In this document: positions 1,248 through 26,661 of the stretch, in pieces
Position numbering within the stretch: the stretch's first letter is position 1
Layout of the letters: every line of letters begins with the position of its first letter
Assembly (NCBI RefSeq): GCF_000400465.1
Contig: NW_008806274.1
Span: 120,244 to 152,243, forward strand
From: Wallemia ichthyophaga EXF-994
Taxonomy: Eukaryota > Fungi > Basidiomycota
Length of the DNA: 32,000 nucleotides
Reading direction: 5' to 3'
Translations under genes and position numbers: made by a program
Notes under the pieces: model-generated
The model's input: the letters and a program-made list of their open reading frames with translations, nothing else
The model's database searches: none
Told to the model about the DNA's origin: nothing

Positions 1248-2296
1248 CTAAACTCTACCGCTTTGGATAAGATCTTGGACGAGTTTGGGGAGATCAGCGT
1301 AGAAGTCTTTTGTTCCTCTCTGAGGCTTCCAGCCGAGCGAACGAGCTCTAGTTGCACGACCTCTGCAATTACTACCAAAGTACCACAAAGCATCAAAACG
1401 ATCAAAGTCTGCGCTACTGAAAGACTCTACATTCGCAGAAGAGATGCGACCGTGCTTCGAGAGTGCGTTTGCCATCACGCCAACAGCCTCCGAATAGTAG
1501 TAGTGATCAGTAACACCGAAAAAGTACGATCCGCTCTTATCCGATGAGATCTTCCCCTCAATTGCATTTCTCAGTATGAGCTGGAACAGATCGACAACTA
1601 AACCTGTCAGCGAGGTCACATCATACCTAGTTCCAACTTACGCTCGTATATATGTACATTGGGCCAGATATTCTTTCCATCTCCAACAACTTTTGCTTGC
1701 TTCAACTCAACAAAAATCGCAGCGAGAGATGGCATCTGCACAGAGAAGCAATTGCTTATCCCAGCTTTATAGAGGGCATGGTCGACTGCTTGGCCCCACA
1801 CAGTCGAAGGATAGACTATATGTAGCTGCATTTTATCGCTGTGCTCGAGGAGAAACTCATCCACATCGCGATGGACTTGAGAGGTGGGGAGAGTGTTGAT
1901 ATGTTGAGAGTCGCTGTCGTCGTACGTGGTATGCTGGTCGTGGAGTCCGCGTGCATCGTCGACGAGTGCACCCGTACCAGATACGTGTATATAGATAGCG
2001 CTTTTCCCCTTGCCTTTCTCAATGCCACTGACGATGGCCTTCGTTGAGGGCATATCGTCGGCAGAGTTGGCAGTGTGGATGACGACATCCGCTTTCTTTG
2101 CCTCATCTTCTATCAAATCAAACGAATTGTTGTCGCCGACAACTGCTTCGATGTTTTTGAATTGATTCAACTTGCTCGCCTTGTCAGTGGAGCGTGTGAG
2201 TGCTCTGTAATTAAAGCTAGGCCATTGATCTGTGAATCTTGCTAGTATACTGCCGCCAATGTATCCAGTTGCGCCTGTGAGAAAAACTTGAACCAT
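1248..2296 (-). CDS. NAD(P)-dependent epimerase/dehydratase (extended SDR, Rossmann fold)
   Basis: Starts MVQVFLTGATGYIGGSIL (GxxGxxG) at ATG 2296. Intron 1641-1598 (GTAAGT..CTGAC..TTTAG) joins ORFs 1616-2353 and 1248-1619, giving WPNVHIYE|LVDLF. C-terminal FGSNCRGRATRARSLGWKP is characteristic of this fungal family. Confidence 0.9.
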
Positions 2297-2507
2297 ATTG
2301 TGAATAGACTGAGTGGTGAGTGGTGGTAAGTGGTGGAGTGTGAGGAGTATCAAATGGATTCCTATGACACCATTACATAAGCATCAGCATGATCGTAAGC
2401 GACATCGTTCTTGCTCAGAACGGATATTGAAAATAGCCTTTCCAAATCAGCGTCTCGGAACTGCTTTTTTCTGGCGATCCTTTTCCTTTACCAACAACCG
2501 CAACACG

Positions 2508-8453: not shown

Positions 8454-11406
8454 TTATACGTCCGTCTTTACAAACATACTTAAAACTTTTACACAATTTT
8501 CAATCTGCCCGACGCTCAACTCATCCAAGAAGTCGTTACATACGAGGTTGACGACTTCAAACGCCTTTTTTATCTCAGTTGGCTGTTTGCTTTGTGTACT
8601 TGTTGCTAAAATATTTAAAACACTATCCCATTCAATTACCAAACCGTCTCCGGCGCTCTCCAGGCATTTGTGTAAAGTGTCTAACCCTGATTCGCGTATT
8701 GTCTTGAGAATATTGTTAACCGAATATCCTCCACCTTCCAGATTAAGACTAGAGAGATCTTTCAGAGCGTTTAATACACTCTTCTGTATAGCCGCCTTGT
8801 CAATCTTTTCATTCTCTTTGAAATCACCTTGCGCAGCACTCAGTCCGCCGATGAGCAATCTATTCAATACTTCCGAAGCTTCCACACGCAGTATGCTATC
8901 GAATTCCAATATATCTCCACCAACCACCATCAATAAAGTCTCAATAACCATTAACCATCCTCTCTGTGTCCCATTTTTTTGTTATCACTGATGACATCAT
9001 TTAGGGGAAATCACTTACAGCATCTCCAATCATCAATCTGCGCAAATTTAGCTGTCCAACTACGTCGATTTTTGATATTGCGAATACAGAAGACCTCACT
9101 TCTTTGCCCCCCGAAGCTCTATTACCTTCAATTGATGTGCGTGTACTCGATCTGGGCGATTTCGCTGCCGCGTTTACTCCATCTCCCACGCTCAATCGAC
9201 AAAGCGCATGTACGAAAATCTCTAACGACCTTTCGTTGAAATCAACGCTGTGCTTGAATATCTCTTCTATATTATCATATAACAGTCTAGCGTCTGATGA
9301 ATTTTGGGCAATATTTACCGCAACATTATCAGCAATAGCCGTAGTAGTACCTTGTTCAGCTGAAGGTATGTACTGCTTCTGCTTTCTCTCATAATCCAGA
9401 TGAGAGTCAAGAACATAGTGTGCATTCTGCAACGTTTCCAACACATCAAACCAAGAATCACCTAACAGATTCGACAGTACAGCTGTGAGATTGATCAGAA
9501 CGCCAAGACATATGTGGTTCCTGTTCGATAGTCTTGGCGGTGGGTATGAGAACGTAGACGATGTCGGTACAGTCGCTGTAGTTGGAGTCATGCCTATACT
9601 CATGTTCTTGCTCATACTCTCCAATGAGGGGCTGCCTATATCGCTCCTTCTTTCGTTCCACCTCACTATCGCATTAATGGCCATATTCGGGCATGACAAG
9701 CCGTACAGCAATCCCAGAAATGCATTGCGTGAAACTTCCAGTCCCAGCGTACCACTAACAACGGCCATATTCTCTACGCTTTTTATACACTTGACGAATA
9801 TGTCGTCATCTATTTCACCATTGAGGTATTGACTTAGAGTTGCGATAATAGGTGGCCACGAATCGACAATCATTTCTTTGGCCAAATTTTCACTATTCAC
9901 GATTGTTTTGAAGACATTGCATACGTCCAGTATAATAAGCAGTGCAACATAGAGAGAGCTTACATCACTGATGGCCGGCGCGTCGTGTTTATCCCTCTGA
10001 TCCATCATACGCAATTTTATTTTGCGATCAGCACTCAGCTTGAACTGTCGCTGAGAGAAATGTGTGGGTTGATTTGCAGTGTTGGTACCGACCATCGCTG
10101 CTACTTCTCCAACATAACTATACGAAGATGCGTCAACTGTAGCAGGTTCCTTGGGTATGTAGCGTGTGCCCAGCCCTGACATGTCACTATTATGTCCCAT
10201 AACGTGTGCCTTCTCACCAACAAATCTCGCTATTGCCGTGAGAAGGCTGTTAAATATATCTTTCCCCAACTGCTGGTATTGATTGATAACGATTGCTCTA
10301 TTGGAAAATAAAGACTGTGTGACCTCGAGACTGATACATTTCATCCAAGATTGACCATCATTTGATTCCAGTATCTGGATGAGATTAGTCCAGATCTCTC
10401 TACATTCTTGAACCATATCATCTAGAAAACCATCGACGAGTATCTGTGTGATTTGCATAAGTCTAATTCCGACGGCGAACCTCATGTGCTTGTCGTTAAG
10501 CATTGACTGTATGATGGGATATAATTGCTTCTTGACAAGGTAAAGTAAAGAGGGATGAGTTTTGAAGAGGTGAATATGGTTTTTGAGACAACTCTCTACC
10601 AAGTCTAATGCTGAATCTGTCGGTAAGCGACCTATATTGATGTAGCTTGGTAATTTCGTCCCGTTCAAAAGTGAGATAGCGTCTGCAAAGAGTAAATGAG
10701 CTGCAAAGGCATTAGGTGCAACAGGTACACTCGTTCCATCTTCTAAATCAACAAAGAGAGATGGCCGACTGTCGAGGATGCTCTTGTCGAGCTTGTCTTC
10801 CTCCCTTACTCTCTCGAAGACGTTCGAGACGAGTTGCATGAGAGTTGCAGAGGCTGTACTGGAGACAACAGACATCTTTGAGTCTTGCAGTCTGAACGAA
10901 ATGACAAGACATTCAGAAATCTCGTCAGCGTGTAGATCAGACGTAGTGTTGAAAAGAGAGAGTAGAATCTGGAGTATTTTAAGTTGAATCTCGAAGCCTT
11001 TTGAGATTAGTTGGCGTATGATAGCGATAACGGTGCTAACGACGGGCTTTATGGGGTGTGTTTAGATAAATGACTATGTAGACCTCTTTCGAACGCACCT
11101 GTAAAACTAGTTTGAGATTAATGAGCCTTGATAACGCGGATAAGGAGAGGGTGATGATGGAAGACGAGCTAGTCTGACAAGCCAAAACGATAGGTTTAAT
11201 TAGGAGATGTGAATGCTCTTCGTCGATTTGATCACGCTGGAGTATCTCCAAAGCCTTTTCAACAGCCTGGAAAGTGTTAGAGATGAGTTGAGATACGCCA
11301 GCCTCAGCGCCCAACTAACCTGCTTCACGTTTGGAAATTTACGTTTCGTGTCATTTCCGAGATTTTGTAATTCATTTCTTAGTAAACCAAGCGAAGTGGT
11401 GGACAT
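8454..11406 (-). CDS. MON2: Mon2 (Arf-GEF-like endosome/Golgi scaffold), about 930 aa, apparently lacking the C-terminal domain
   Basis: Exons 11406-11320, 11266-11099, 11046-9019, 8963-8454; introns of 53, 52 and 55 nt. N-terminal LRNELQNLGNDTKRKFPNVKQ|AVEKAL, FEIQLKILQIL, SVVSSTASATLMQLV, LDLVESCL, WMKCISLEV, MDQRDKHDAP and AFEVVNLVCNDFL match Mon2 blocks as I remember them. Confidence 0.88.
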
Positions 11407-14926: not shown

Positions 14927-15598
14927 TCACCTTGATGTGCCCCGTATACTGGCTGGATTGGGTGAATGAGTCGTTGAATGAGCAGGAACAGTCAGCGCTC
15001 GATCGTCAATACGCGTCTTCTTCTCTCCATTCGCGACACCGTTGATACCATCGTCCTCATCTTCGCGTCTCCTCTTCTTTTTCTTCTTCTTGCGTCTTTC
15101 ATCGTCGTCGTCGCGTCCGGTGAAGACGGAGGCGTCAAACTGAGTTGAGTTAGTCGTGCTCATTCCACGAAGTACATTGATCGCCCAACTTACATTGGGT
15201 ATACTTCCAGGCGGGAGTCTTCCAAACGCCTCGACCAACGTGGCATTATCAATACTATCAGCAGTGATAGTTGGTGGCTGGAACTCTGGATCGAACAGCA
15301 GATCGCGAATTTTAGGCAGCGAGCTATCCTTCTTGCTGATTGTGTTACGTCCAGGAAGATCATTTACAAATAGCTTGAACGTTGACTCCATTTTGTTTCT
15401 CCTAGCCTCACCGTTATCCTGAGGAATTTGAGTGCTACTGCCAGTTGCGTTGGCTGCAGTTGGCTTTATGTATGGCTTTACGTATGTGTCGTAAGTCTCA
15501 TCGAGCCCGAACAACGTTAGCAGATCCTGATTGCCGTTGATTGTACCATTCGGAACCTCACTGGGATCTTCAATTGGATAATAATTCGGTATTTCCAT
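14927..15598 (-). CDS. MED19: Mediator subunit Med19 (Rox3)
   Basis: GNQDLLTLFGLDETYDTYVKP, FKLFVNDLPGR and a Lys-rich KKKKKKRRRE tail. Probable in-frame 54-nt intron 15193-15140 (GTAAGT..CTAAC..CTCAG). Confidence 0.75.
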   Translation of the reverse strand: MEIPNYYPIEDPSEVPNGTINGNQDLLTLFGLDETYDTYVKPYIKPTAANATGSSTQIPQDNGEARRNKMESTFKLFVNDLPGRNTISKKDSSLPKIRDLLFDPEFQPPTITADSIDNATLVEAFGRLPPGSIPNVSWAINVLRGMSTTNSTQFDASVFTGRDDDDERRKKKKKKRRREDEDDGINGVANGEKKTRIDDRALTVPAHSTTHSPNPASIRGTSR

Positions 15599-15643
15599 TT
15601 GCGATGGTTGTTATGGTTGCGATGTTGGTTGACTACTTCAACG

Positions 15644-16248
15644 ATGAACTGTGAGCGCTATGAGGTGACTGTAGGGAAATCAGCTAAAATCTTATAAATA
15701 GTCATTCCCAATGGGCCTGGATTGCTGCCAAAGTGGATGCTATTCGTTTCTGTGCTCGCCATATTCAACAGCATACAGAATTGCTTAACTACTTCACTCA
15801 CAGCTCGCGTATACAATCACAAGCCACAATTAGGTGTGTTTCTATTGGCAATTTGCCCTCTCTCACAGCCACTCCTCAGTAAATCCCCTTCAAGCACGAA
15901 CGTTTGGCGTGTGGACCTTCACTTCAGCTGTCGTTAGATTCTACGCTGCGCACAACATTAATAATAAAGTGTGAGCGGGAATGTTTGTAGGTGAATTCCA
16001 TCATTCTCACATCTCATCCCTTTAGCGTCTACGAAATCGCTATCTGGACATACGCTATCGTCATTGCGCACTATATATCCGAACTTCTCTACTACAGAAC
16101 ATCGAAGCTAAGCGCAGGAATCATTAGTCCACTTGTTATCGGTAGTAAGTTCGGATTCCTTGCCCTGTTCCCCACCATCCTAACAGCCATATTAGCTGCT
16201 TCTTTCGTGTGGATGATATCACAATACGATTTCTACGTCAAGATTTGA
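15644..16248 (+). CDS. ERG28: Ergosterol biosynthesis scaffold Erg28
   Basis: Micro-exon ATGAACT 15644-15650 and intron 15651-15701 give MNFIPNGPGLLPKWMLFVSVLAIFNSIQ. Later exons give NPLQARTFGVWTFTSAVVRFYAA and HYISELLYYRT. Four introns in total. Confidence 0.92.
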
Positions 16249-16313
16249 AATCTAATCTGTTTTATTATATACTCTTAATAATCTTTATCTATTGAAATCA
16301 ATGTACATTCTTT

Positions 16314-19300
16314 TCACTTGAACGCAAAGAAATCGGATGCTGCTACGGGTGAACTATGCTTCGGAAGCTGTACTGCGCGTTGTCGACCACTGCTTCCATC
16401 GTTTTTATGGCGTGGGTGACGAATATGCCCTTCTGAGTCTCTCGAACCGGGTGAGAATTCATCAATTGGTTGCTCATCCCTTGTTGCTGTCTTGCTTGGC
16501 GTACCCGAAGGCGTCGATTTAGCTACAGCCTTTTCATCTCTCCGCTTCCGTATAGCTTCAGCACTCGGTATGTCAACCAGCGAAAGTGGTTCGTCTCGCG
16601 CAAATTGATACCTTTCACTTCCATCTTTTATCACACTCGCTTTAGATGGTTTGCGTGTTTTCAGGGCTGCAGCTAGCTTTGATCTGCGTGCATCTTGTGA
16701 GAGTGTTCTTTCAACAACATCTTTGTCTGGTGGTGGAATGCTCTTTGCACTAACGCTTTTCTCAAATGATAATGCACTTGGCTTGCTACCGTTACCGCCC
16801 ATACCGCCGTTGTTGATTGAAAGCTTTTCAGCACGCTTAATCAAATCATCCAAATTAATCCTCTTCTCAGCTATAGCTATCGCCATTGTACGTGTTGTCC
16901 GGTTTATACTGTCAATTGAAGGAACTTTGAATGTCTTTCCACCTGTCTTCGATTGCATCATCTTGGCCTTGAGTGAGCTGAGTTGATCCTCTACACTCAT
17001 TATACCATCATTCAGCGCTTGCATAGATTTCCGAAGCTTTTGCTGATTCTCACTGTGCTCTGGTCCTAACTGCCTCACTTTCACTATACGAGCAAATTCT
17101 GGATCATTCCTTGCCCTTATGAATCGTGAAATCTCTTCTTTCTTAGTTTCAGCTGTGTGATAATGCGTTAGATAGTTATCAAGTTTAGCATATCCCTAAC
17201 TCACCCTTTAACAAAAGACTCTGTAACTCAACAACTTTGCGCTTCTGTGACAATGACGAATCCTTCAATTCTATCGTATCAGCCTCCAAATCCACACTGA
17301 GCTTCTTAATCAACTCAATGTCACCCAATGACCATTGAGATTTGTCATAGAGAGCCATTACATCATATTCATCAACTGATTGACGCTTCTTTGTGATTTT
17401 ATCGTGGAAATCTAGACAGCTCTTGATATTAACATTCATCTGTTAAACGTAAGCTAGGCGACCTCCACCAAACAGACAACTTACACTCTCGATCTCCTTC
17501 TCAACCATTAGGTACATCTTCAAGAACTCCATAGCCATGCCAGAGGTACCCTCTAATTGACTTGCAGACAACTCCTCATCCATTAGCTTCAACTTAGGAG
17601 GTTGATGTGGTGTTTGTATTGAGTATGATTCATTGTCATTATGCACCTTCTTGAAAGGCGCCGAGACTGGCACAGGAGAAGCAATTGGCGCCTGTTTAGA
17701 GAATGCATCCGAGAAGGCCCCATTATTGAAGCTGAAACTACCACTTGATGATTGAGCTGGAGTTTCCGTACTTGGATTGAAACCAGCGAAAGTAGGACTT
17801 TGAGGTGCGCTAAATAAATTTGGTTTAACAACTTCTGTTGCTGGCGCTTGCTGACCGAAACCAAACTTAGTCTTCTAGGTTTTGTCAAAAGAGCAAAGTT
17901 GGTACAAAATTACTTACGTCTTTTTGCGGAGAGGTTATTGATGCCTTACCGTAGACTGGTGGAGACGAAGCCAGCGGTGAGCTCTCACGCGGTTTAAATG
18001 GTAAACCGAAAGGTGACTGTTGACCAGCCTTGCCGAATGCACCGCTCTTAAAGCTGAGTGCAGATGCTGCCGACGTTTTTTCAGGTGAGCCTGGAGGTGT
18101 GGTAGATTCGTCGTCTTCCACTTCCCTCTGCTCTTCAACACCTTCTTTCTGCTCTTCATGACCCTCTTTCTGCTCTTCGACTTCAACACCCTCTTCCTCT
18201 TCCGCCTCATCAACACCCTCTTCTTCGTCAACAGTGTTGCTGACATGCTCATACCCTTCACTATCACCGCTTTCTTCTTCTTCTTCCTCCTCCTCATCGC
18301 CATCATCTTCTCCTTCCTCATCTTCAGCGTTATCCTGATCAAATTGAACTACCGGCGGATGTTCTTGTGACACTCTCCTACTTGGAGACTCAGATGCAAA
18401 GCCAAAGAAACTCTTCGTTCTGTCATCTTCTTCTTTAGCATCGCTTATTTGTTTCTGATAAAATTGTGAGATTAGAGATGAATAACAACTCTCAAACCAA
18501 CCTTATCCTGGGATTTTGCAATGTTTCCACCAATTGAGAAGCTACTCGACGAACTAAAGGCGGATGGTTTACTGCTTTCAGGGGTTTTTGAAGCATCTCC
18601 ACCAAACCCAAATGCACCTGTAGGGTTTGGTGATTCATTATTAGTTCCTGCGAATGAGAAAGCACTCGCTGGTTTGCTATCTTCAGATGGCTTGGCAAAT
18701 GCTGAGAAAGCATTTTTTGGTGCTTCATTCTTTTTATCATCTTTAACGGGAGATCCGAATGCATTGGCATGAGCACTAGTACTGGCACCACCAAAGCTGA
18801 AAGCAGATGGTGCTTTCCCCAAATTATCCTTCTTCTCGTTTTTAGCAGGCGAAGTAAAGGCATTAGCACCTCCAAAGCTAAACTGGGACGGTGCCTTCAG
18901 TGGATCATCTTTCTTCTCGTCAGTTGCAGTTGATTCTTCTGGCTTGACACCTCCAAAGCTAAAACCACCAGTCGTTGGAGCTGCTTTAGGGGGCTGAGAA
19001 GCGGTCCCAAAAGCACTTGCACCACCGAAGCTAAATGCTGATGGTGCTTTGACCGTATCATCCCTCTTCTCATCCGTTTTTGGCGCATGTGAAGAAGAGC
19101 CTGACGAACCAAATGAGCCTCCTCCGAATGAGAACCCGGCACCCCCTGGGGCTGCAGGTGGAGCTGCTGGCATTGATGACGCTTTGCTATTTTCGCCCGA
19201 TTCCTTTAAAGTGTTGTCGCATACACCACACTTGGTCGCATCAGCTGGTTGATCGAGCATACATACGCCACACTGTTGCTTGCTTTCTTGAGACTTTGCG

Positions 19301-22300
19301 AACATTTGAGCAAGGGGGCTTGGCTCGCTAGTCTTCTCTTGCGTTGGCGCGCTTGACAGCGCAGGTTTTGGTGCCTCAGAATCAGGGTTCTTGAATGCAG
19401 TTGCGCATACCGTGCACTTATCAGCATCTTTGGACGACTTTAATGAGCAACTTGAACATATTTGCTGATCGTTGGACTGTGTACGTGCTGTAGCGAAGAT
19501 GCTTGGCATTTCTTGCTTGTCTTCTTTTTCGTTCTTGCTACTCTCATCTTGCTGATTTTGCTTTGCTTTAGCTTCATCCTCAGCGTCTGCCTTACGCTTG
19601 TCTTCTTCCTCAGCCTTTTTACTGGTTTCCTCTCCCTCTTTCTTTTGAGCAGCGGCGGCCGCGGCGGTAGCAGTCTCCTCTTCTTTCTTTCTCTCGTTTT
19701 CCGCTTCAACAGCCTTCTTGCAATTTTCTTCTTCCTCTCCTTTTTTAACTTTCTCCTCTTTCTCCTTCTCTTCCTTTTTTTCCCTTTCTTGTTGTTGCTT
19801 TTGAGCTTTTTCTTTTTCAGCATTAGCAGCAGCTTCCTGCTCAGCTTTGGCAATCTGTAGCTTTTCGCGCTCTTCCTCGCCTCTGTCTTTCTCCTTGACA
19901 TAAGCGAACGTGTCATCAACGTTATCACCCTCTTCCGATTCAGCTTCTTCGTGTGTCTTGGCATTACCCTCCTTCAAGCAGCCAACATCGAGTTGGGTAC
20001 CGCTACCAAAATCAGCGAGAAGATCATCAACCTGACCATCTTTCTTCTTATCTTTCTGAGACATCTCAGCAGACGTATTGCGCAAACCGAACGTATTAGA
20101 AGCACCTCCGAAACCGAACCCTGCACCTGCACCTGCACCTGTATCGTTAGATGGCTTGGTTGGTGAGCTTCCACTGATTGCTTTGAGGCGAGTTAGATTA
20201 CATCTCTAAAGTCTATGTACCACTCACAGAATGCATTGCTCGTCGGCTGCAATGGAGTTTTACTTTCACTTCCGCTTTCTCCTCTCTCTCTCTTCACGTC
20301 AGCCTTAGGTGTAGTGCTGCCGAAAGCACTCTGACCAAATGCACTTGGCTTTCCGAATGCACTCGATTCAGTCTTACTCTTGACATTGTCTGAGAACGCA
20401 CCAAATGCACTGCCTCCCTCTTTCTTCTCACCGAACAAACTCGGTTTAGCTGCAAATGCACCAAAGCCTCCCCCGCCACTGGGCGTTGTAGCCGGTGAGC
20501 TCTCACTGCCACCTTGGTCCTCTTTTTTAGGCGTACCGAATGCCGATGACTGTCCAAACGCAGATGAAGATGGCGGCTTGGATGCGAAAGCGCCAAAGCC
20601 GCCACCACTAGATGGTGCAGTTGCAGATGCTAAAGCAGAAGTAGATGAGCCCTCCTTCTCCTTCCTGGGTGTACCGAATGCTGATGTCTGACCGAATGCC
20701 GAGGGTTGTCCAAAAGCAGTAGATGTTGACGGCTGAGATGCGAACGCACCAAATGCTCCACCGCTAGTTGGTGTGCTGGTTTGGGGGCTTTCTTTATCTG
20801 GCTTTGGTGCACCGAATGCTGAGGTCTGGCCAAATGCCGAAGTCTGACCGAATGCACTGGGCTGGCCAAACGTACTAGCAGATCCACCGAATGCACCAGG
20901 TTTGGCAGAGAAAGCCCCAAATCCGCCACTAGCAACACTTGATTCGGCTGGTTTGTCATCCTTATTTGCAGATCCAAAGGCAGTAGGTTTGTTTGAAAAT
21001 GCACCAAATCCACCTCCGCTTTGACTGAAGCCACTTGGCTGACCGAAAGCACTAGGTGTGCTTTGTCCAAACGTGCTGTTTTGTCCAAATGCACTGCCTG
21101 TTGTTGGTGCAGTCGAAGGACTCGACGAGAAGGCATTCGCAGGAGCCGGAGCCGGAGCCGGAGCTGGATTTGAAAAGGCAGATGGTTTTTGCTGCGGCTC
21201 ACTCTGCATAGGTGCAGCTTCAATCGATTCTTCTTGCGGATCATTGGGCCATCCTTTCAGATACTGATATGGTCCATACGAGTTTATTAACCACCACGCA
21301 AACAGTTTACCTTCAGAGTTGAGCGTCCATAGAGCAGGAGCAGGAGGGCCATCAGGTGTGTCTGCAGCAGAGCCAGGCTCTGGTTTTAATGGATCTTTCG
21401 CACCCAAGTCAAGCTCCAGCCCGACTGGATATGTCTCTTCTTGCTCCTCCGACATTGGCAGTGCTGGTCTAGCAGTTTCTGGAAGAGCGGCAGCGGCAGC
21501 AGCTATCTCATCGTCTCCAAACACTTCTTTGGCGTGTGGGGAGGACGTGTCTGGTGTGACTATACAGCCTATATCCGAAGAAGGACCTGATGCAGCAAAT
21601 AGTATGTTCCTGAATGGCGACCAATCCCTCAACCAGCTGAAATAGCGGTATGGGAGACGCGACATAACGCCGAAAGGCGGTGCTGGATCAATAGCTTCGA
21701 TGTAGTTGCCATTGTGGATGAAACATGTCTTGTCTTCGAGCGTGTAAGCATCCTGATCGCTATCTCGGCCCTCACTGGAAGCCTCTTTACTGAGTGAAAA
21801 TGTGATAAGGAAGAGATTGTTCTCGAGCCATTTGAGTGAGTTTGGTACGTGATTGGGGGTGAGCTCGAATGAAGAAGGGGGAGGAGGTATCGACATTTTG
21901 ACTTGATTGGAGGTAGTTACTGTGATGATTTCGTTTGTATTTAACGCTAAAGCTAGTTGCTTCCCTTTGGCTGACCAGCTTGCAGCAAAAGTGGTTTTGT
22001 TGAGGCATTGCGTGTTTTTTGACATTTCATCGTGCAAGTAAATGCAGCCGTCAGCTGTGAGAATGGTAATATATTGTCCTACTGGATTTGGGAGTATTGA
22101 GGTTGGATGAGAAGGCAAGTCGATGGAGTTGGTGAGTGTGGCATCGACGTACAAGTGCAACGACTTATCGCTGGCGACTATGAGTTGATTGGAGTGGTAC
22201 TTGATGTGCTGAGATTGCGTGTTGATCGTGTGTATCGGTGCTTGTGGTGAGAGAAGCTGATGAGACTGAGATTGCGACAGTTGAGAGCGCAGGCCGGATA

Positions 22301-22520
22301 AGGAATAAACGTGGACGCCGCTGTTTGTGGCCACAGCCAGCCTATCCAGCTCGTTGCTCAACGTGAAGAGATTCGCTGCGTCGTTGATCTTCTCTCCAAG
22401 GGTGTAAGAGATGTAAGATGAATTTGAGAATGGACGCGTAGTCAAGCACTGCGTGGGTAATTAGATAACGTATCTCTGGGGTAATTACAGTATTCTCACT
22501 TCAATCTCTATTTCGTCCAT
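16314..22520 (-). CDS. NUP159: Cytoplasmic-face FG nucleoporin Nup159/Nup214, about 1970 aa, with two internal RanBP2-type zinc fingers
   Basis: Exons 22520-22500, 22448-20228, 20180-18502, 18454-17918, 17874-17485, 17439-17205, 17152-16314; all junctions keep the frame. N-terminal beta-propeller-like region (ASWSAKGKQLAL, WLENNLF, DPAPPFG), SAFG/PAFG repeats, FSFG repeats, and C-terminal coiled coil AETKKEEISRFIRARNDPEFARIVKVRQLGPEHSENQQKLRK. Confidence 0.9.
18787..19068 (-). repeat. Three copies of a 16-aa K(K/R)D(D/N)xxKAPS(A/Q)FSFGG unit in Nup159
   Basis: KRDDTVKAPSAFSFGG, KKDDPLKAPSQFSFGG and KKDNLGKAPSAFSFGG, read directly from ORF 18472-20085. Confidence 0.85.
19219..19272 (-). other. 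C4 zinc finger 2 (RanBP2/NZF-type spacing) inside Nup159
   Basis: CGVC-MLDQPADATK-CGVC, i.e. C-x2-C-x10-C-x2-C. Confidence 0.78.
19405..19458 (-). other. C4 zinc finger 1 (RanBP2/NZF-type spacing) inside Nup159
   Basis: CSSC-SLKSSKDADK-CTVC, i.e. C-x2-C-x10-C-x2-C. Confidence 0.75.
20330..21110 (-). repeat. SAFG/GGFGAF FG-repeat array of Nup159
   Basis: Recurring (S/T)AFGQ(P/T/S)SAFG and GGFGAF(S/A) units. On the + strand, ccgaatgc and ccaaatgc recur. Confidence 0.85.
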
Positions 22521-22667
22521 CGTTGTCAGTGATCAACAAGCCATTTGTGATTTAGCGCTGAGCAGATAAACGAATTCTACAGCGCGTGGTGATTGATCTG
22601 GTTGGTATTCAAAAATTAATCAAACCCCAATTTGCTTTGATTTGTTTGCTTGATTTCTCACTATCTC

Positions 22668-23234
22668 ATGTTCAAACACATTGATTCAGCGTGTACAGCT
22701 GTAAGTTTATCAGAGTTTGAGCATCTCGCTAGCAGAACTCCTGGTAGCTTTTCTGATCTTCCAACGGTGCTCAGGCTCCGCGTAGATGAATGCTCTTTAA
22801 GTGGTGATTCAGAGCTAGATAACAACCTCAAATACACCGTTTTTATCACTGATAAAGAGCTCGTTGTCTTCTCGCAGTCAGTCTCTACGGGCATCAGCTT
22901 GGATTACCCTTCTATCATGCTTCACGCCGTCAGCGCATCAACTAACTCTATCTTCCTGCAAATTGACGAACGTACAGAAAACATAGACGACTTTGAGAGT
23001 AAGGATATTCACATACATCCTCAGAACCCTTCAATTCTTCATGAAATATACGAAAAACTCAGTTTCTGCGCTAGTTTGCACCAGAACAAGTTTCCATCTG
23101 AGGAGGACGATGACGGCGATGCTATGATAGACGATGGCGTTGGGCTCTCAGACCAGGGCGCTGCCAATTTGGCCAGATTCGACGATATGCTAGACAACCA
23201 AGACAAACACACTGACAAAAAGCAGAAGCAATAA
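22668..23234 (+). CDS. pICln/Lot5 (Voldacs domain; snRNP Sm-assembly chaperone)
   Basis: ATG at 22668. ELVVFS...TGISLDYPSIMLHAVS, IFLQID, LHEIYEKLSFCASLH, then an acidic tail; typical of CLNS1A/Lot5. Confidence 0.8.
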   Translation: MFKHIDSACTAVSLSEFEHLASRTPGSFSDLPTVLRLRVDECSLSGDSELDNNLKYTVFITDKELVVFSQSVSTGISLDYPSIMLHAVSASTNSIFLQIDERTENIDDFESKDIHIHPQNPSILHEIYEKLSFCASLHQNKFPSEEDDDGDAMIDDGVGLSDQGAANLARFDDMLDNQDKHTDKKQKQ

Positions 23235-23235
23235 G

Positions 23236-23930
23236 TTAATTGTCCATGACTGTAACTCTAATACAATCTAAATATCCATTGTTATCGGGTGTTACGCGTT
23301 TTGCCAGCCAATGTTCAAGCCATCGACCAAATGCCTCTCCTCTGCTATCTGCACCCCACATCTGCTGTGTGTGGATGGAAACGCCGCCAAAGGAGTTACC
23401 CATGTACACGTCAGTGAGTAATCTATCTCCTACAAATGCAACATTCTTCAAATCACCAAACTTATTCTCCAACGGGGCTCTGAGCTTTGAAGATGGCTTA
23501 GGATGATTGTGCTCGACGACATGGACTCCTGTATTCCGCGACAAAACCTTTGCCTATAATTTTTTAGCGCTGAGAGGAACTAACAAGCCAATCGCACCTG
23601 AATAAGTCCGGGATCTTTGCCTGTGCCGGCTGAGTTAGACAAAATGACGCAGCCATCACTCCCAAAGGCTTCCTTGCACTCAATCCAGCTATTTTGCAGC
23701 TCAGAAACGACGTAATCCTGCCTCGGAAGCGTCAAGCAGTTGTCCCTGTCAATTACGATGCCAGTGATACCTTTACGTTTCAGTGCACTGAAGTCGATCG
23801 AGCGGATGTCTGGGGGTGATGAGCGGGGGGATCAATGAGCAAAATACCTACCCTTCACGCTCATTGAAGGTTTTAGCAGCTTGGGATTGAACGCTGAACG
23901 CAATGTAGCTGCTATCGCTGCAACACTCAT
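23236..23930 (-). CDS. GEP4: Mitochondrial phosphatidylglycerophosphatase Gep4 (HAD superfamily)
   Basis: Exons 23930 (or 23933)-23852, 23809-23598, 23553-23236; introns of 42 and 44 nt. MSVAAIAATLRSAFNPKLLKPSMSVK|DIRSIDF, HAD motif I DRDNCLT, motif II ILSNSAGT, motif III KP, motif IV VGDRLLTD. Confidence 0.92.
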
Positions 23931-23931
23931 C

Positions 23932-24659
23932 ATGGAACAACTTCAACAGTCGCTGGAAACTACAGGCTCTATATCGCTCCCACAGAAAGTCGCTCTGCTA
24001 TCCCACCTCAAGGCTTTAAACAGAGACAGCTCTTCTGTTATACGCCAATCTAAGCAGGCTGCTGCACATCAGGCTCAATTATCAGACGGTGTACACGCTC
24101 AAGTGCAGAATCTATTATACGAAAGGAGGCATTTAGAGCAGGAAATTGAAAGGTGCAGGAATTTCGAGACTAGCTTCGATAAAGTACCTTTGGTTTCACT
24201 TGACGAGTATCGCAAGTTGAATGGGGGCAAGGAGGAAGACGAGCACGTTTTAATGCTCAATAGACTGAAATTCGAGCTGAGAACTCGCCAGGAACTCAAC
24301 GATCACCGCAATCAGCTGCAAGAAGTGCGATCGTCAATCAACAGCGAGAACAATCAGACGAAAAACAGTTTGGAGGATCTTGACAGCGATTTGGATAAGT
24401 TTGTCGATGTGGGTGGGAGTATTCATGCGTTTACAATTGCTGAGATGCTCTATAGTTTGCAAAGGGTATCCAATCCAAGCTTAACAAGCTCGATAAGGTT
24501 TGGGACAAGGAGAGTGAGGAGGAAAGTGAGGAGAGGAAAGAGTCCAAGAATGAACTCAAGGACGATAATGACATTGAGATTGATCAAGCTAACGAGGCTG
24601 ATAATCACAGACCTCAAGATACCAACTCCGGTGAAGATCAACGTATGGATACTAATTGA
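23932..24659 (+). CDS. THOC5: THO complex subunit 5 (FmiP/Thoc5 domain), about 226 aa
   Basis: Exons 23932-24408 and 24456-24659; intron of 47 nt (GTGGGT..TATAG). LKALNR...QVQNLLYERRHLEQEIERCRNF...EHVLMLNRLKFELRTR is the Thoc5 signature. Confidence 0.85.
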
Positions 24660-24669
24660 CCTTGATAAC

Positions 24670-25131
24670 TTATTTACTATCACTACTATGCATATACTGT
24701 TCAACTGCACCTTCCAGTTCACTCACTGCCTCGCTTCTCTCTTGGCTCAATTCATCAGCTCTTCTTGAGGAGACGTTGAGGCGATGGTGATCATCACCGA
24801 GCAAATTGATCATTTTAAGCGCGTGCGTTATATCCAGTAAGCTATTGGCAGAGCGAATCATAGATTCTGATCTGCAGCTGATCTGGAATGCCTCCTTGCT
24901 GATCTTGTAGTTGTCCTTCTGGTTAATTTCCGCGAGGCCTATAATCTCCGACAGTCCATCGCTCAGCTGCCCAACTTCACCATCGACCTTGTTGTTCAAG
25001 CTCTCCTCGAACGCCTCCAAGTATTCCTCCGGAGAACGATCGTCGATTTCTGCTGATTTTGTCGATGAGTTGTTGTTGATAAGCGAGGAGCTCAACGATT
25101 GATATTTCTTAGCGTCTGATTTAACTTCCAT
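24670..25131 (-). CDS. MED22: Mediator subunit Med22 (Srb6)
   Basis: Intronless 153-aa ORF with EAFQISCRSESMIRSANSLLDITHALKMINLLGD, which matches the Med22 motif. Confidence 0.82.
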   Translation of the reverse strand: MEVKSDAKKYQSLSSSLINNNSSTKSAEIDDRSPEEYLEAFEESLNNKVDGEVGQLSDGLSEIIGLAEINQKDNYKISKEAFQISCRSESMIRSANSLLDITHALKMINLLGDDHHRLNVSSRRADELSQERSEAVSELEGAVEQYMHSSDSK

Positions 25132-25177
25132 TGGGAGATGGGTGATGGGAGTTGACCAGGCGAGCTATCCAACGTCG

Positions 25178-26661
25178 ATGATCCAACGCGGGTGGATTTG
25201 CAGAGAAGGTATTCTCAGGCAGCTCAATGCAAGCAGCATCAGAAGCATATCCAGGCGCAGTATTTCTACATCCCCAGCACCAAAGGAGGAGCCAACGGCA
25301 TCCCCAGCCACCTCCTCAGCTACATCTCTAAAAAGAATCATTGCAGACTCCATCAAAGCAACAGGCCCTATTCCAGTAGCCAGGTATATGTCAGCCTGCA
25401 CTTATCATCCTACTGAGGGTTATTACAGCCGTAAAGACAAAGATCCAATCAGCAAGCACGGCGACTTTATTACTTCCCCTGAAATATCTCAAATATTCGG
25501 AGAGTTAATTGCCGTTTGGTTTCTCCATCAGTGGCATGCTCTGAGACATGACTTATCACACACGTCGAATAACCCTCCAAAGAAAGTCAGATTCGTTGAG
25601 CTCGGACCCGGAAATGGTACTCTGATGGCTGATGTTCTGCGTACCTGGCAATCCTTCCCCACCGCTTGGGAGAACTTGGAAAGTGTGCAGCTAGTCGAGA
25701 CATCGCCAGCCTTAAGAGATACTCAGAAAGCTGCTTTGGAGGGATTTGGGAAGGGTTTAAAATTTCATGATAGAGTCCAGCACATTGACAAAGGTTAGCT
25801 TTCATTAAATCAGCCAAGGCGACATCTTTCCGATCTGACACTAAAGCTAAGATGAGAGCACGTTCACTTTTGTGCTCGCGCATGAATTCTTCGATGCCCT
25901 CCCGGTACATCTTTTCCAAGTGAGTCTTAATTTGACTTCTTGCGTAAAGCTCAAACTGTGTCCAGAAAACAGATGCAGGATTCAGAGAAGTTCTGGTAGA
26001 TCTCATTAATCCACGCATACGCTCAGAAGAGAGCGAGCAGGAAGTTACAAACGAGAATAATAAATGGCTAGACGGAGATGCTGGCTTCAAGTATATAGTC
26101 AGCAAGCAACAGTCAGCCATGAGCTCATTGATACCGATGGTTGCACCCCACATATTTTCAGGCGAGGGCAAGGAGGAAGAAGGGCAGCGAGTCGAGCTCG
26201 GCATAGAAAGCTACCATATTGGCAACTCTATAGGCCAACTTTTGCGTAAAACATCCGAAAATGCGGCAGGCGGCTGTGCTCTTTTTGTCGACTACGGTAA
26301 GGATGGATGGACGGGTGACACATTGCGAGGATTCAAGAATCATCAGCAAGTAGATGTATTGAGTGCGCCCGGAGAATGCGATATTACATCTGATGTTGAC
26401 TTTGGAGTTTTGAGGGAAGCGCTCGCTCACAATGATACTGACACGATTGGTTCTGAGGTTATCACTCAGCGGGACTTCCTCGTCAAGATGGGTGTGGCGG
26501 CAAGGTTGGATACCTTACTTAATAGCGCACAGTCTAATGAGACTAAATTATCCATCGCTAGTTCTGCGAAACGGTTGCTCGATGTGCGCGGTATGGGCAG
26601 CCAGTACAAGTTCATGGCTGCATTCAACACGAGTCACCACAATCGCTATCCTTTTATCTAG
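25178..26661 (+). CDS. NDUFAF7: Mitochondrial SAM-dependent arginine methyltransferase NDUFAF7/MidA
   Basis: Arg-rich presequence-like start MIQRGWICREGILRQLNASSIRSISRRSIS (in-frame ATG 25145 also possible). Motifs: YMSACTYHPTEGYY, GDFITSPEISQIFGE, VELGPGNGTLMAD, AHEFFDALP, LFVDYG, TLRGFKNH, DITSDVDF. Introns 25794-25851 and from 25920. Confidence 0.93.

What the first reader, a model, noticed from the sequence alone, without database searches (positions are those of the whole stretch)
23920..23945. Head-to-head GEP4 and THOC5 start codons touch or overlap (CATCATG): zero intergenic DNA
Seen: in CACTCATCATGGAA, GEP4 (minus) starts at 23930, or at the in-frame ATG 23933. THOC5 (plus) starts at 23932. 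The starts are 1 nt apart or overlap. Both N-termini look family-typical, and THOC5 has no other usable ATG before its conserved domain. Inference: each promoter and 5'UTR must lie inside the partner's coding sequence, and the two mRNAs must have complementary 5' ends. This implies transcriptional interference, dsRNA pairing or mutually exclusive expression, or else near-leaderless mRNAs.
Basis: partly seen in the sequence, partly recalled or inferred. Interest (0 to 1): 0.8.

Follow-up and report, generated by a model that had tools for sequence, protein, structure and literature searches.

The report
Two divergent genes sharing start-codon DNA
In the very compact genome of the salt-loving fungus Wallemia, two unrelated genes on opposite strands begin at the same seven bases with no DNA between them; this layout is real and conserved across the genus, but it is an extreme case of known gene crowding rather than a new kind of system.

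Summary
The window is Wallemia ichthyophaga. In CATCATG (23928-23934), the THOC5-like gene (+) starts at 23932. GEP4 (-) starts at 23933 or 23930. The starts therefore overlap by 2 nt or lie 1 nt apart.

Both starts hold up against relatives:
- The 14-mer CACTCATCATGGAA is identical in four Wallemia lineages.
- The GEP4 N-terminus aligns end to end with homologues from other fungal phyla.
- The downstream Met used by some GenBank models exists only in W. ichthyophaga.
- A 332-aa THOC5 model with upstream exons has stop codons in other species.

A 27-nt invariant block (23911-23937) is the longest in the locus (0 of 20,000 codon shuffles reach it). It covers GEP4 codons 1-8, which is THOC5 positions -21 to +6. 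The rest of the first 50 codons of either gene shows no excess synonymous conservation.

Most likely reading: genome compaction removed the spacer, and THOC5's leader and start context lie inside GEP4's first codons. The two transcription units must then cross at their 5' ends. No transcript-start data could be reached, so this mechanism is inferred.

Neighbouring genes are packed almost as tightly, with head-to-head gaps of 5-57 nt and tail-to-tail gaps of 1 and 10 nt. GenBank already holds models with abutting starts. Interest is moderate.

The parts
23928..23934 (.). CATCATG junction. THOC5 ATG is 23932-23934 (+). GEP4 ATG1 is 23933-23931 (-) and ATG2 is 23930-23928 (-).
   Evidence: Read directly. 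Identical in all Wallemia loci.
23911..23937 (.). 27-nt block, GCTATCGCTGCAACACTCATCATGGAA, invariant in 4 Wallemia lineages. It equals GEP4 codons 1-8 and THOC5 positions -21 to +6. Proposed THOC5 leader and start context embedded in GEP4 coding sequence.
   Evidence: longest invariant run in the 1.45-kb locus (next longest is 14 nt); 0 of 20,000 codon shuffles reach 27 nt; class-specific P=1e-4 for GEP4 codons 3-7 all being synonymously invariant; the block is unique in the window.
23852..23933 (-). GEP4 exon 1 (MMSVAAIAATLRSAFNPKLLKPSMSVK, then the first base of the D codon).
   Evidence: The same structure is seen in the W. mellicola 201-aa model P0051.
23810..23851 (-). GEP4 intron 1 (GTAGGT...CAG, 42 nt). 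Boundaries are conserved but the sequence is not.
23598..23809 (-). GEP4 exon 2, containing the HAD motif DRDNC.
   Evidence: invariant D48, D50, N51.
23554..23597 (-). GEP4 intron 2 (GTGCGA...TATAG, 44 nt).
23236..23553 (-). GEP4 exon 3, ending with stop codon TAA at 23238-23236.
23862..23864 (-). GEP4 codon 24, the ATG of 'MSVK'. This is the alternative start used by the 180-aa and 146-aa GenBank models. It is Met only in W. ichthyophaga (ATC, ATT and CTG in the others).
23932..24408 (+). THOC5-like exon 1 (159 codons).
   Evidence: The spliced 226-aa product is 100% identical to the GenBank protein P0036.
24409..24455 (+). THOC5-like intron (GTGGGT...TATAG, 47 nt).
24456..24659 (+). THOC5-like exon 2, ending with stop codon TGA at 24657-24659.
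23903..23908 (+). ATG-TAG one-codon upstream ORF at -29 from the THOC5 ATG. Present only in W. ichthyophaga. It lies just outside the invariant block.
22650..23234 (+). Voldacs/ICln-like gene, convergent with GEP4. Its stop codon lies 1 nt from the GEP4 stop codon.
24670..25131 (-). Med22 gene, convergent with THOC5 (10 nt between the stop codons). It is divergent from the NDUFAF7-like gene, whose ATG is at 25178 (46 nt between the starts).

Best explanation
The arrangement is real and conserved across the genus Wallemia. Genome compaction has removed all spacer between two unrelated, divergently transcribed genes: the mitochondrial PGP phosphatase GEP4 and a short THOC5-like THO-complex subunit. 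Their start codons now sit in one heptamer, CATCATG. Neither gene has intergenic DNA for a promoter or leader. THOC5's leader and start context therefore lie inside GEP4 codons 1-8, which is the 27-nt invariant block. Its core promoter must lie further into GEP4 exon 1, intron 1 or exon 2. GEP4's leader and promoter lie antisense within THOC5 exon 1. The two transcription units therefore cross, and their mRNAs should be complementary over at least a few tens of nucleotides at the 5' ends. Shown here: the positions of both starts, their conservation, and the extra constraint on the 21 nt upstream of the THOC5 ATG. Inferred: where transcription starts, and that the block is constrained because it serves both as GEP4 codons and as THOC5 leader. 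The confidence given is for the whole statement; that the two coding sequences truly abut I hold at about 0.9.
For: The junction 14-mer is identical in W. ichthyophaga (the window plus 8 strains), W. hederae, W. mellicola and two Logan Wallemia contigs.

For the GEP4 start:
- The Pfam domain match begins at residue 6.
- The N-terminus aligns end to end with 10 proteins from Agaricomycetes, Mucoromycota, Basidiobolus, Glomeromycota and Ascomycota, plus the W. mellicola model. Invariant P17, L19 and P22 lie upstream of Met24.
- Met24 is I/I/L in the other Wallemia lineages.
- An in-frame TGA lies 12 nt upstream of the ATG in 3 of the 4 lineages.

For the THOC5 start:
- All orthologues begin MEQLQ or MELLQ.
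- There is no in-frame upstream ATG before a stop in any species.
- The 332-aa extended model has Val in place of its Met, and stop codons, in other species.

For the extra constraint:
- The 27-nt invariant run compares with a next-longest run of 14 nt.
- No codon shuffle out of 20,000 reaches 27 nt.
- GEP4 codons 3-7 (S, V, A, A, I) use identical codons in all four lineages. Background invariance is 10-14% for 4- and 6-fold codons, giving P about 1e-4.
- Med22's first codons, which are also highly conserved as protein, vary normally at third positions.

The 12 nt before the THOC5 ATG are C/A-rich, as are most other leaders in the region. No upstream ATG lies within 28 nt of the THOC5 ATG, or within 61 nt of the GEP4 ATG, in any species.

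The context is uniformly hyper-compact. W. ichthyophaga is described as having an unusually compact 9.6-Mb genome that is about three-quarters coding (PMC3849046).
Against: - No transcript 5' ends, RNA-seq or EST data could be reached, so TSS positions, the overlap of the mRNAs and any interference are untested.
- Only four lineages were available, and a simple unweighted run-length shuffle of codon flags is not significant (5-codon run reached in 15% of shuffles).
- The block could instead reflect constraint on the 5' end of the GEP4 mRNA.
- Beyond the block, neither gene shows excess synonymous conservation in its first 50 codons. Any embedded promoters therefore leave no detectable sequence footprint.
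- GEP4's upstream 20 nt are G/T-rich, unlike typical leaders here.
Confidence: 0.6

Rival explanations
1. Near-leaderless solution. Both mRNAs start within a few nucleotides of their ATGs, inside or at the edge of the invariant block. The transcripts then barely overlap, and translation starts on very short leaders, as reported for Giardia and Encephalitozoon (from my own knowledge of that literature).
For: The conserved block is short and sharply bounded at -21 from the THOC5 ATG. The nearest upstream ATGs in two species lie just outside it, at -29 and -41. The 30-46 nt spacer of the neighbouring Med22/NDUFAF7 pair is not conserved at all, which fits spacers acting only as short leaders. Several PyA dinucleotides that could act as initiators lie in CAACACTCATC.
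Against: There is no TSS evidence. No such mRNAs have been described in basidiomycetes in the papers I found. The upstream ATGs that do occur open 1-5-codon ORFs that end before the main ATG, so longer leaders would be tolerated. GEP4's side shows no conserved element.
Confidence: 0.15
2. In W. ichthyophaga, GEP4 is translated from Met24 (MSVK), as in the 180-aa and 146-aa GenBank models. That would leave 67 nt of untranslated DNA between the two coding sequences, so there would be no true abutment in this species.
For: An in-frame ATG exists at 23864 in W. ichthyophaga. Most W. ichthyophaga strain annotations choose it.
Against: The codon is ATC, ATT and CTG in W. hederae, W. mellicola and Wallemia sp.. 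The 23 residues upstream are conserved as protein in all Wallemia lineages and align with GEP4 N-termini from other phyla, including invariant P17, L19 and P22. The Pfam domain match starts at residue 6. The two ATGs at the junction are invariant. GenBank models for this gene disagree with each other (146, 180, 185 and 200 aa). The 200-aa and 185-aa models contain intron-derived sequence, so the annotations carry little weight.
Confidence: 0.08
3. THOC5 has an upstream coding exon on the + strand, antisense to GEP4, as in the 332-aa GenBank model P0043. The ATG at 23932 would then be internal.
For: Three strain annotations carry this model. The + frame upstream of the ATG is open for 84-114 nt in all species. 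It shares third codon positions with the GEP4 frame, so codon periodicity cannot tell the two apart.
Against: The model's initiator Met is Val in W. hederae and W. mellicola. Its two upstream exons contain stop codons in every other lineage available: W. hederae, W. mellicola and Wallemia sp.. There is no in-frame ATG in the open stretch. All other annotations start at MEQ or MEL.
Confidence: 0.02
4. The 27-nt block is not functionally special. It reflects strong protein-level conservation of MMSVAAIA plus chance identity at about six synonymous sites. The abutment is a neutral end-point of spacer deletion with no embedded signal.
For: Only four lineages were compared. The unweighted shuffle for a 5-codon invariant run anywhere gives P=0.15.
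Against: Weighting by degeneracy class gives P=1e-4. The nucleotide-level codon shuffle gives 0 of 20,000. The block lies exactly where a partner-gene signal is expected.
Confidence: 0.12

Closest known systems
Overlapping or abutting genes and transcripts in compacted eukaryotic genomes (microsporidia such as Encephalitozoon and Antonospora; cryptomonad and chlorarachniophyte nucleomorphs). Recalled from the literature, not re-read here.
   Same: Intergenic DNA is reduced to a few or zero nucleotides. Transcription signals and UTRs are forced into neighbouring genes. Both head-to-head and tail-to-tail neighbours are affected, as they are here (1, 0, 10 and 46 nt across five genes).
   Different: Wallemia is a free-living basidiomycete with ordinary spliceosomal introns and a 9.6-Mb genome whose average spacing is far larger (about three-quarters coding, PMC3849046). 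This is a local extreme rather than the genome-wide norm. Transcript overlap is not demonstrated here.
Classical bidirectional promoters of divergent gene pairs (yeast and mammalian head-to-head genes).
   Same: Two genes on opposite strands with adjacent 5' ends. The pairing is conserved across species.
   Different: A bidirectional promoter is a shared nucleosome-free spacer from which the two TSSs point away from each other. Here there is no spacer, and the TSSs must point towards and past each other, so the architecture is crossed rather than back to back. The adjacency is also not ancient: GEP4 has other neighbours in Sistotremastrum, Laccaria and Hesseltinella.
Very short-leader or leaderless mRNAs of Giardia and Encephalitozoon.
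   Same: This may be the way out of having no room for a leader. A short conserved element lies immediately upstream of the ATG.
   Different: Not shown for any Wallemia gene. The other leaders in the region look like ordinary C/A-rich fungal leaders.
Existing GenBank gene models for this locus.
   Same: W. mellicola models place the GEP4 start 1 nt from the THOC5 ATG. Three of the eight W. ichthyophaga strain loci shown place it overlapping by 2 nt.
   Different: The models are automatic and contradict each other (146, 180, 185, 200 and 201 aa for GEP4; 226 and 332 aa for THOC5). No paper found comments on the arrangement.

Membership tests
GEP4 / mitochondrial PGP phosphatase (Pfam PF09419, HAD superfamily) | Full-length match to the PGP_phosphatase domain above the curated cut-off | tested here: met
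   E=3.9e-36, 124.6 bits against a cut-off of 20.4, covering residues 6-160 of the protein and positions 3-163 of the 168-position profile.
GEP4 / mitochondrial PGP phosphatase (Pfam PF09419, HAD superfamily) | HAD catalytic motif DxDx and conserved downstream motifs (SNSAGT, KP, GDRxxTD) | tested here: met
   invariant D48, D50, N51, S85-T90, K117, P118, G140-R142, T145 and D146 across 12 fungal proteins.
THOC5 / Fms-interacting protein (Pfam PF09766) | Match to the FmiP_Thoc5 domain above the curated cut-off | tested here: met
   E=6.3e-27, 95.2 bits against a cut-off of 29.4.
THOC5 / Fms-interacting protein (Pfam PF09766) | Full-length domain coverage | tested here: not met
   only positions 2-138 of the 362-position profile are matched. 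The protein is 226 aa, so 'THOC5-like' is the safer name.
Classical bidirectional promoter pair | Divergent orientation with adjacent 5' ends | tested here: met
Classical bidirectional promoter pair | A shared non-coding spacer (about 100-1000 bp) from which the two TSSs diverge | tested here: not met
   The spacer is between -2 and +1 nt.
Overlapping transcription units of compacted eukaryotic genomes | Intergenic distances too short to hold promoters, leaders or terminators | tested here: met
   CDS-to-CDS gaps across five consecutive genes are 1, 0, 10 and 46 nt.
Overlapping transcription units of compacted eukaryotic genomes | Transcripts demonstrably extend into neighbouring genes | not testable with these tools
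   No cDNA, RNA-seq or TSS data were reachable. All Logan contigs found were genomic and retained the introns.
Leaderless or very short-leader mRNAs | TSS mapped within a few nucleotides of the start codon | not testable with these tools
   No 5'-end data. The only hints are indirect: the sharp -21 boundary of the block and the positions of upstream ATGs.

The most novel reading that the evidence does not exclude
The invariant 27-mer is a self-contained two-way start module. It would hold an initiator-type element and two start codons nested in the palindrome CATG, and would launch very short-leader mRNAs in both directions without any nucleosome-free spacer. This would mean a free-living basidiomycete has independently evolved the short-leader initiation seen in Giardia and microsporidia. 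It would also provide a natural minimal system for asking how RNA polymerase II promoters work when they lie entirely inside coding sequence.
Probability: 0.12. Interest if true: 0.65.

Novelty: new member of a known kind. Interest (0 to 1): 0.38.

Why it matters
The finding fixes the correct gene models for a locus where public annotations disagree: 146, 180, 185, 200 and 201 aa for GEP4, and 226 and 332 aa for THOC5.

It also documents, in a free-living fungus, a divergent gene pair with no intergenic DNA that has been kept across a genus. Next to the junction is a short stretch where coding sequence is frozen at synonymous sites. If transcript mapping confirms crossed 5' ends or very short leaders, the locus and its equally crowded neighbours would be a compact natural test case. 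It could show how promoters, leaders and terminators function inside coding DNA, and how much transcriptional interference housekeeping genes tolerate.

It is not a new class of element. It is the extreme tail of gene crowding already known from more reduced eukaryotic genomes.

Tried and rejected
- **Upstream THOC5 exon.** I mapped the 332-aa GenBank model P0043 onto the window and translated the aligned columns in the other species. There is no conserved Met and there are stop codons, so I rejected it.
- **Downstream GEP4 start (MSVK).** Rejected by comparative data.
- **The 200-aa W. ichthyophaga and 185-aa W. hederae GEP4 models.** Both contain intron-derived residues and lack the conserved SAFNPKLLKPS segment. 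I rejected them in favour of the 203-aa model, which matches the structure of the W. mellicola 201-aa protein.
- **Broad synonymous constraint over the first ~150 nt of both genes.** Not found: 19-24% invariant codons, against 24% elsewhere.
- **Recurrence of the 27-mer, or over-representation of CATCATG, in the window.** Neither was found.
- **A structured RNA or tRNA at or near the junction.** No Rfam or tRNA hit anywhere in the window.
- **More lineages from JGI metagenomes.** The THOC5 alignment scan and the exact 27-mer scan both found nothing.
- **Transcript-derived contigs.** Every Logan or ENA contig that carries these genes is genomic.
- **A look-up of the ORF at 9001-10875.** Nothing on record.
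- **Ancestral adjacency of GEP4 and THOC5.** Not seen in three outgroup fungi.
- **Literature.** Searches for Wallemia with overlapping genes, compact intergenic regions or RNAi genes returned nothing on this arrangement.

Full report
**What is in the sequence**

The window reads ...GCAACACTCATCATGGAACAA... at 23920-23940. The + strand ATG is at 23932-23934. CAT at 23931-23933 and at 23928-23930 gives two consecutive minus-strand ATGs whose first bases are 23933 and 23930. The first-stage coordinates are exact. If GEP4 uses its first ATG, the two start codons share two bases inside the palindrome CATG. If it uses the second, one base separates them.

**Identity of the genes and the organism**

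I spliced the minus-strand gene by eye:
- exons: 23933-23852, 23809-23598 and 23553-23236
- introns: GTAGGT...CAG (42 nt) and GTGCGA...TATAG (44 nt)

This gives a 203-aa protein. It matches Pfam PGP_phosphatase over residues 6-160 (E=3.9e-36).

The plus-strand gene has exons 23932-24408 and 24456-24659 and a 47-nt intron. Its 226-aa product matches FmiP_Thoc5 (E=6.3e-27, profile positions 2-138 of 362). That product is 100% identical to a GenBank protein of Wallemia ichthyophaga. The GEP4 model is 99% identical to another W. ichthyophaga protein.

The window therefore comes from W. ichthyophaga. Its 9.6-Mb genome has been described as unusually compact, with about three-quarters coding sequence and 514 genes per Mb (PMC3849046).

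**Are the two start codons the real ones?**

For GEP4, four lines of evidence point to the junction ATGs:
- The 23 residues before the alternative Met24 ('MSVK') are conserved in all Wallemia lineages.
- They align end to end with GEP4 N-termini from Agaricomycetes, Mucoromycota, Basidiobolus, Glomeromycota and an ascomycete. Three invariant residues (P17, L19, P22) lie upstream of Met24.
- Met24 is Met only in W. ichthyophaga. It is Ile, Ile and Leu in W. hederae, W. mellicola and a Wallemia sp. from a Logan assembly.
- An in-frame TGA lies 12 nt upstream of the ATG pair in three of the four lineages.

For THOC5:
- All orthologues start MEQLQ or MELLQ.
- No in-frame ATG precedes the start before a stop codon in any species.
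- The next in-frame Met lies about residue 108, far past residue 26, where the conserved domain match begins.

One GenBank model, carried by three strains, extends THOC5 to 332 aa with two upstream exons antisense to GEP4. I mapped those exons to 23311-23412 and 23655-23816. In the other species the initiator Met is Val, and both exons contain stop codons. That model is an artefact.

**Conservation of the arrangement**

The 14-mer CACTCATCATGGAA is identical in every Wallemia sequence fetched:
- the window and eight other W. ichthyophaga strains
- W. hederae
- W. mellicola
- two Logan contigs

These lineages are 67-82% identical in THOC5 protein. Only about a quarter of codons that encode the same amino acid are identical in all four, so the conservation is not due to recent common ancestry.

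The adjacency appears to be specific to Wallemia. GEP4 has different neighbours in Sistotremastrum, Laccaria and Hesseltinella.

**A sharply bounded invariant block**

I aligned 1.45 kb across the lineages. The longest invariant run is 27 nt, at 23911-23937 (GCTATCGCTGCAACACTCATCATGGAA). The next longest runs are 14 and 11 nt.

The block is asymmetric. It runs 21 nt upstream of the THOC5 ATG, covering GEP4 codons 1-8, but only 3 nt past that ATG.

GEP4 codons 3-7 (AGT GTT GCA GCG ATA) are identical in all four lineages. Background invariance for 4-fold and 6-fold codons in these two genes is 10-14%. The class-specific probability for this pre-specified position is about 1e-4. Shuffling whole codon columns never produced a 27-nt run in 20,000 trials, and produced a run of 23 nt or more only 4 times. 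A cruder, unweighted test for a 5-codon run anywhere is not significant (15% of shuffles), so the result rests on the degeneracy-aware tests.

Outside the block, synonymous conservation in the first 50 codons of either gene is no higher than in the rest of the genes (19-24% against 24%). Med22's first codons are equally conserved as protein, yet they vary normally at third positions. Proximity to a start codon alone therefore does not explain the block.

**What the block probably is**

The last 12 nt before the THOC5 ATG (GCAACACTCATC) are C/A-rich, with A at -3 and G at +4. Most leaders of neighbouring genes are also C/A-rich.

No upstream ATG lies within 28 nt of the THOC5 ATG in any species. 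The nearest are at -29 in W. ichthyophaga (ATG-TAG) and at -41 in W. hederae (a 5-codon ORF), both just outside the block. W. mellicola and Wallemia sp. have none within at least 165 nt.

On the GEP4 side, the nearest upstream ATGs are at -62 and -73. The -73 ATGs open ORFs of one or two codons and the -62 ATG one of seven codons.

My reading is that the block is constrained because it must encode MMSVAAIA and also serve as THOC5's leader and start context, and possibly its initiator. This is inference.

The block is unique in the window. It is not part of any Rfam family or tRNA.

**How it most likely works**

With no spacer, the back-to-back geometry of an ordinary bidirectional promoter is impossible. 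To include its ATG, each TSS must lie on the partner's side of the junction.

Either the two transcription units cross, giving mRNAs with complementary 5' ends, or both leaders are only a few nucleotides long. I favour crossing, with a THOC5 leader of about 20 nt or more. The reasons are the extent of the block and the ordinary look of other leaders in the region. I give the near-leaderless version about 15%.

Transcriptional interference and mutually exclusive promoter use on a single template are plausible consequences, but they are untested. No cDNA, RNA-seq or TSS data were reachable. All Logan contigs carrying these genes are genomic.

**Context: this is an extreme, not an exception**

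Five consecutive genes are arranged as Voldacs/ICln (+), GEP4 (-), THOC5 (+), Med22 (-) and NDUFAF7-like (+). Together they occupy about 4 kb, with CDS-to-CDS gaps of 1, 0, 10 and 46 nt. The same order holds in W. hederae and W. mellicola.

The tail-to-tail gaps mean that 3' ends must overlap as well.

The 30-46 nt Med22/NDUFAF7 spacer is not conserved in sequence.

Elsewhere in the window:
- An unnamed gene (-) starting at 15598 faces Erg28 (+). The gap is 5 nt as annotated, or 45 nt by my reading.
- An NmrA-like gene faces an unnamed ORF at about 57 nt.

**Comparison with what is known, and novelty**

The closest known cases are the overlapping and abutting genes of microsporidia and nucleomorphs, and the short-leader mRNAs of Giardia and Encephalitozoon. 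I recall these from the literature and did not re-read them here.

The locus fails the defining test of a classical bidirectional promoter, which requires a shared spacer.

GenBank already holds automatic models with abutting starts (W. mellicola) or overlapping starts (three of the eight W. ichthyophaga strain loci shown). These models contradict one another. No paper I could find discusses the arrangement.

I rate it a new member of a known kind, of moderate interest. The useful products are a corrected gene model, the conserved 27-nt block, and a well-defined locus where transcript mapping would show how promoters work inside coding DNA.

Noticed in passing
window 23232-23238: The Voldacs/ICln-like gene (+) ends with TAA at 23232-23234. 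GEP4 (-) ends with TAA at 23238-23236. Only 1 nt separates the convergent stop codons, so both 3' UTRs and poly(A) signals must lie in the partner's coding sequence. The gap is also 1 nt in W. mellicola and about 9 nt in W. hederae.
   Followed up: partly
window 24657-24672: The THOC5 stop (TGA, 24657-24659) and the Med22 stop (24670-24672, minus strand) are 10 nt apart, which is another convergent near-abutment. In W. mellicola the annotated gap is 1 nt.
   Followed up: partly
window 25129-25180: The Med22 ATG (25131, -) and the conserved NDUFAF7-like ATG (25178, +) are 46 nt apart. The gap is about 30-35 nt in W. hederae and Wallemia sp. The spacer sequence is not conserved between species, although the flanking codons are.
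   Followed up: partly
window 15596-15720: An unnamed 223-aa gene (-) starts at 15598. GenBank places the Erg28 start (+) at 15604, which is 5 nt away. That frame does not join the Erg28 reading frame across the GTGAGC...ATAG intron. ATG 15644 does, giving MNFIPNGPGLLPKW, so the true gap is probably 45 nt. The stretch between them is the C/A-rich leader of the minus-strand gene.
   Followed up: partly
L001 3303-3904; L004-L011; proteins P0001, P0002, P0043, P0046-P0048: Public gene models for this locus contradict each other. GEP4 is given as 146, 180 or 200 aa in W. ichthyophaga; the 200-aa model contains the intron-derived 'ILLIDPPRSSPP'. It is 185 aa in W. hederae, where the start MLLPISFLL lies inside intron 1, and 201 aa in W. 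mellicola. THOC5 is given as 226 aa or as an artefactual 332 aa.
   Followed up: yes
window 23840-23931: The THOC5 reading frame continued upstream, and the GEP4 frame on the other strand, share their third codon positions. The + frame stays open for 84-114 nt upstream of the ATG in all four lineages, but it contains no ATG. This is probably a by-product of the antisense phase, but it hampers tests based on codon periodicity.
   Followed up: partly
window 2290-2370: An NmrA-like gene (-; conserved start MVQVFLTGATGYIGG, ATG near 2296) faces an unnamed lysine/glutamate-rich ORF (+; first ATG near 2354). The head-to-head gap is about 57 nt.
   Followed up: no
window about 16300-22500 (minus strand): A very large gene of about 1970 aa, shown without any Pfam family in the annotated loci. 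It has long runs of SAFGQ/FG repeats and looks like an FG-nucleoporin. Its start lies 147 nt from the Voldacs start.
   Followed up: no
L014, 40 nt upstream of 11 annotated starts: Most 5' leaders in this region are C/A-rich and G-poor on the sense strand (for example caccaacatccacca-ATG and ctcccatcacccatctccca-ATG). GEP4's upstream 20 nt are G/T-rich, because they are the antisense of THOC5's C/A-rich first codons.
   Followed up: no
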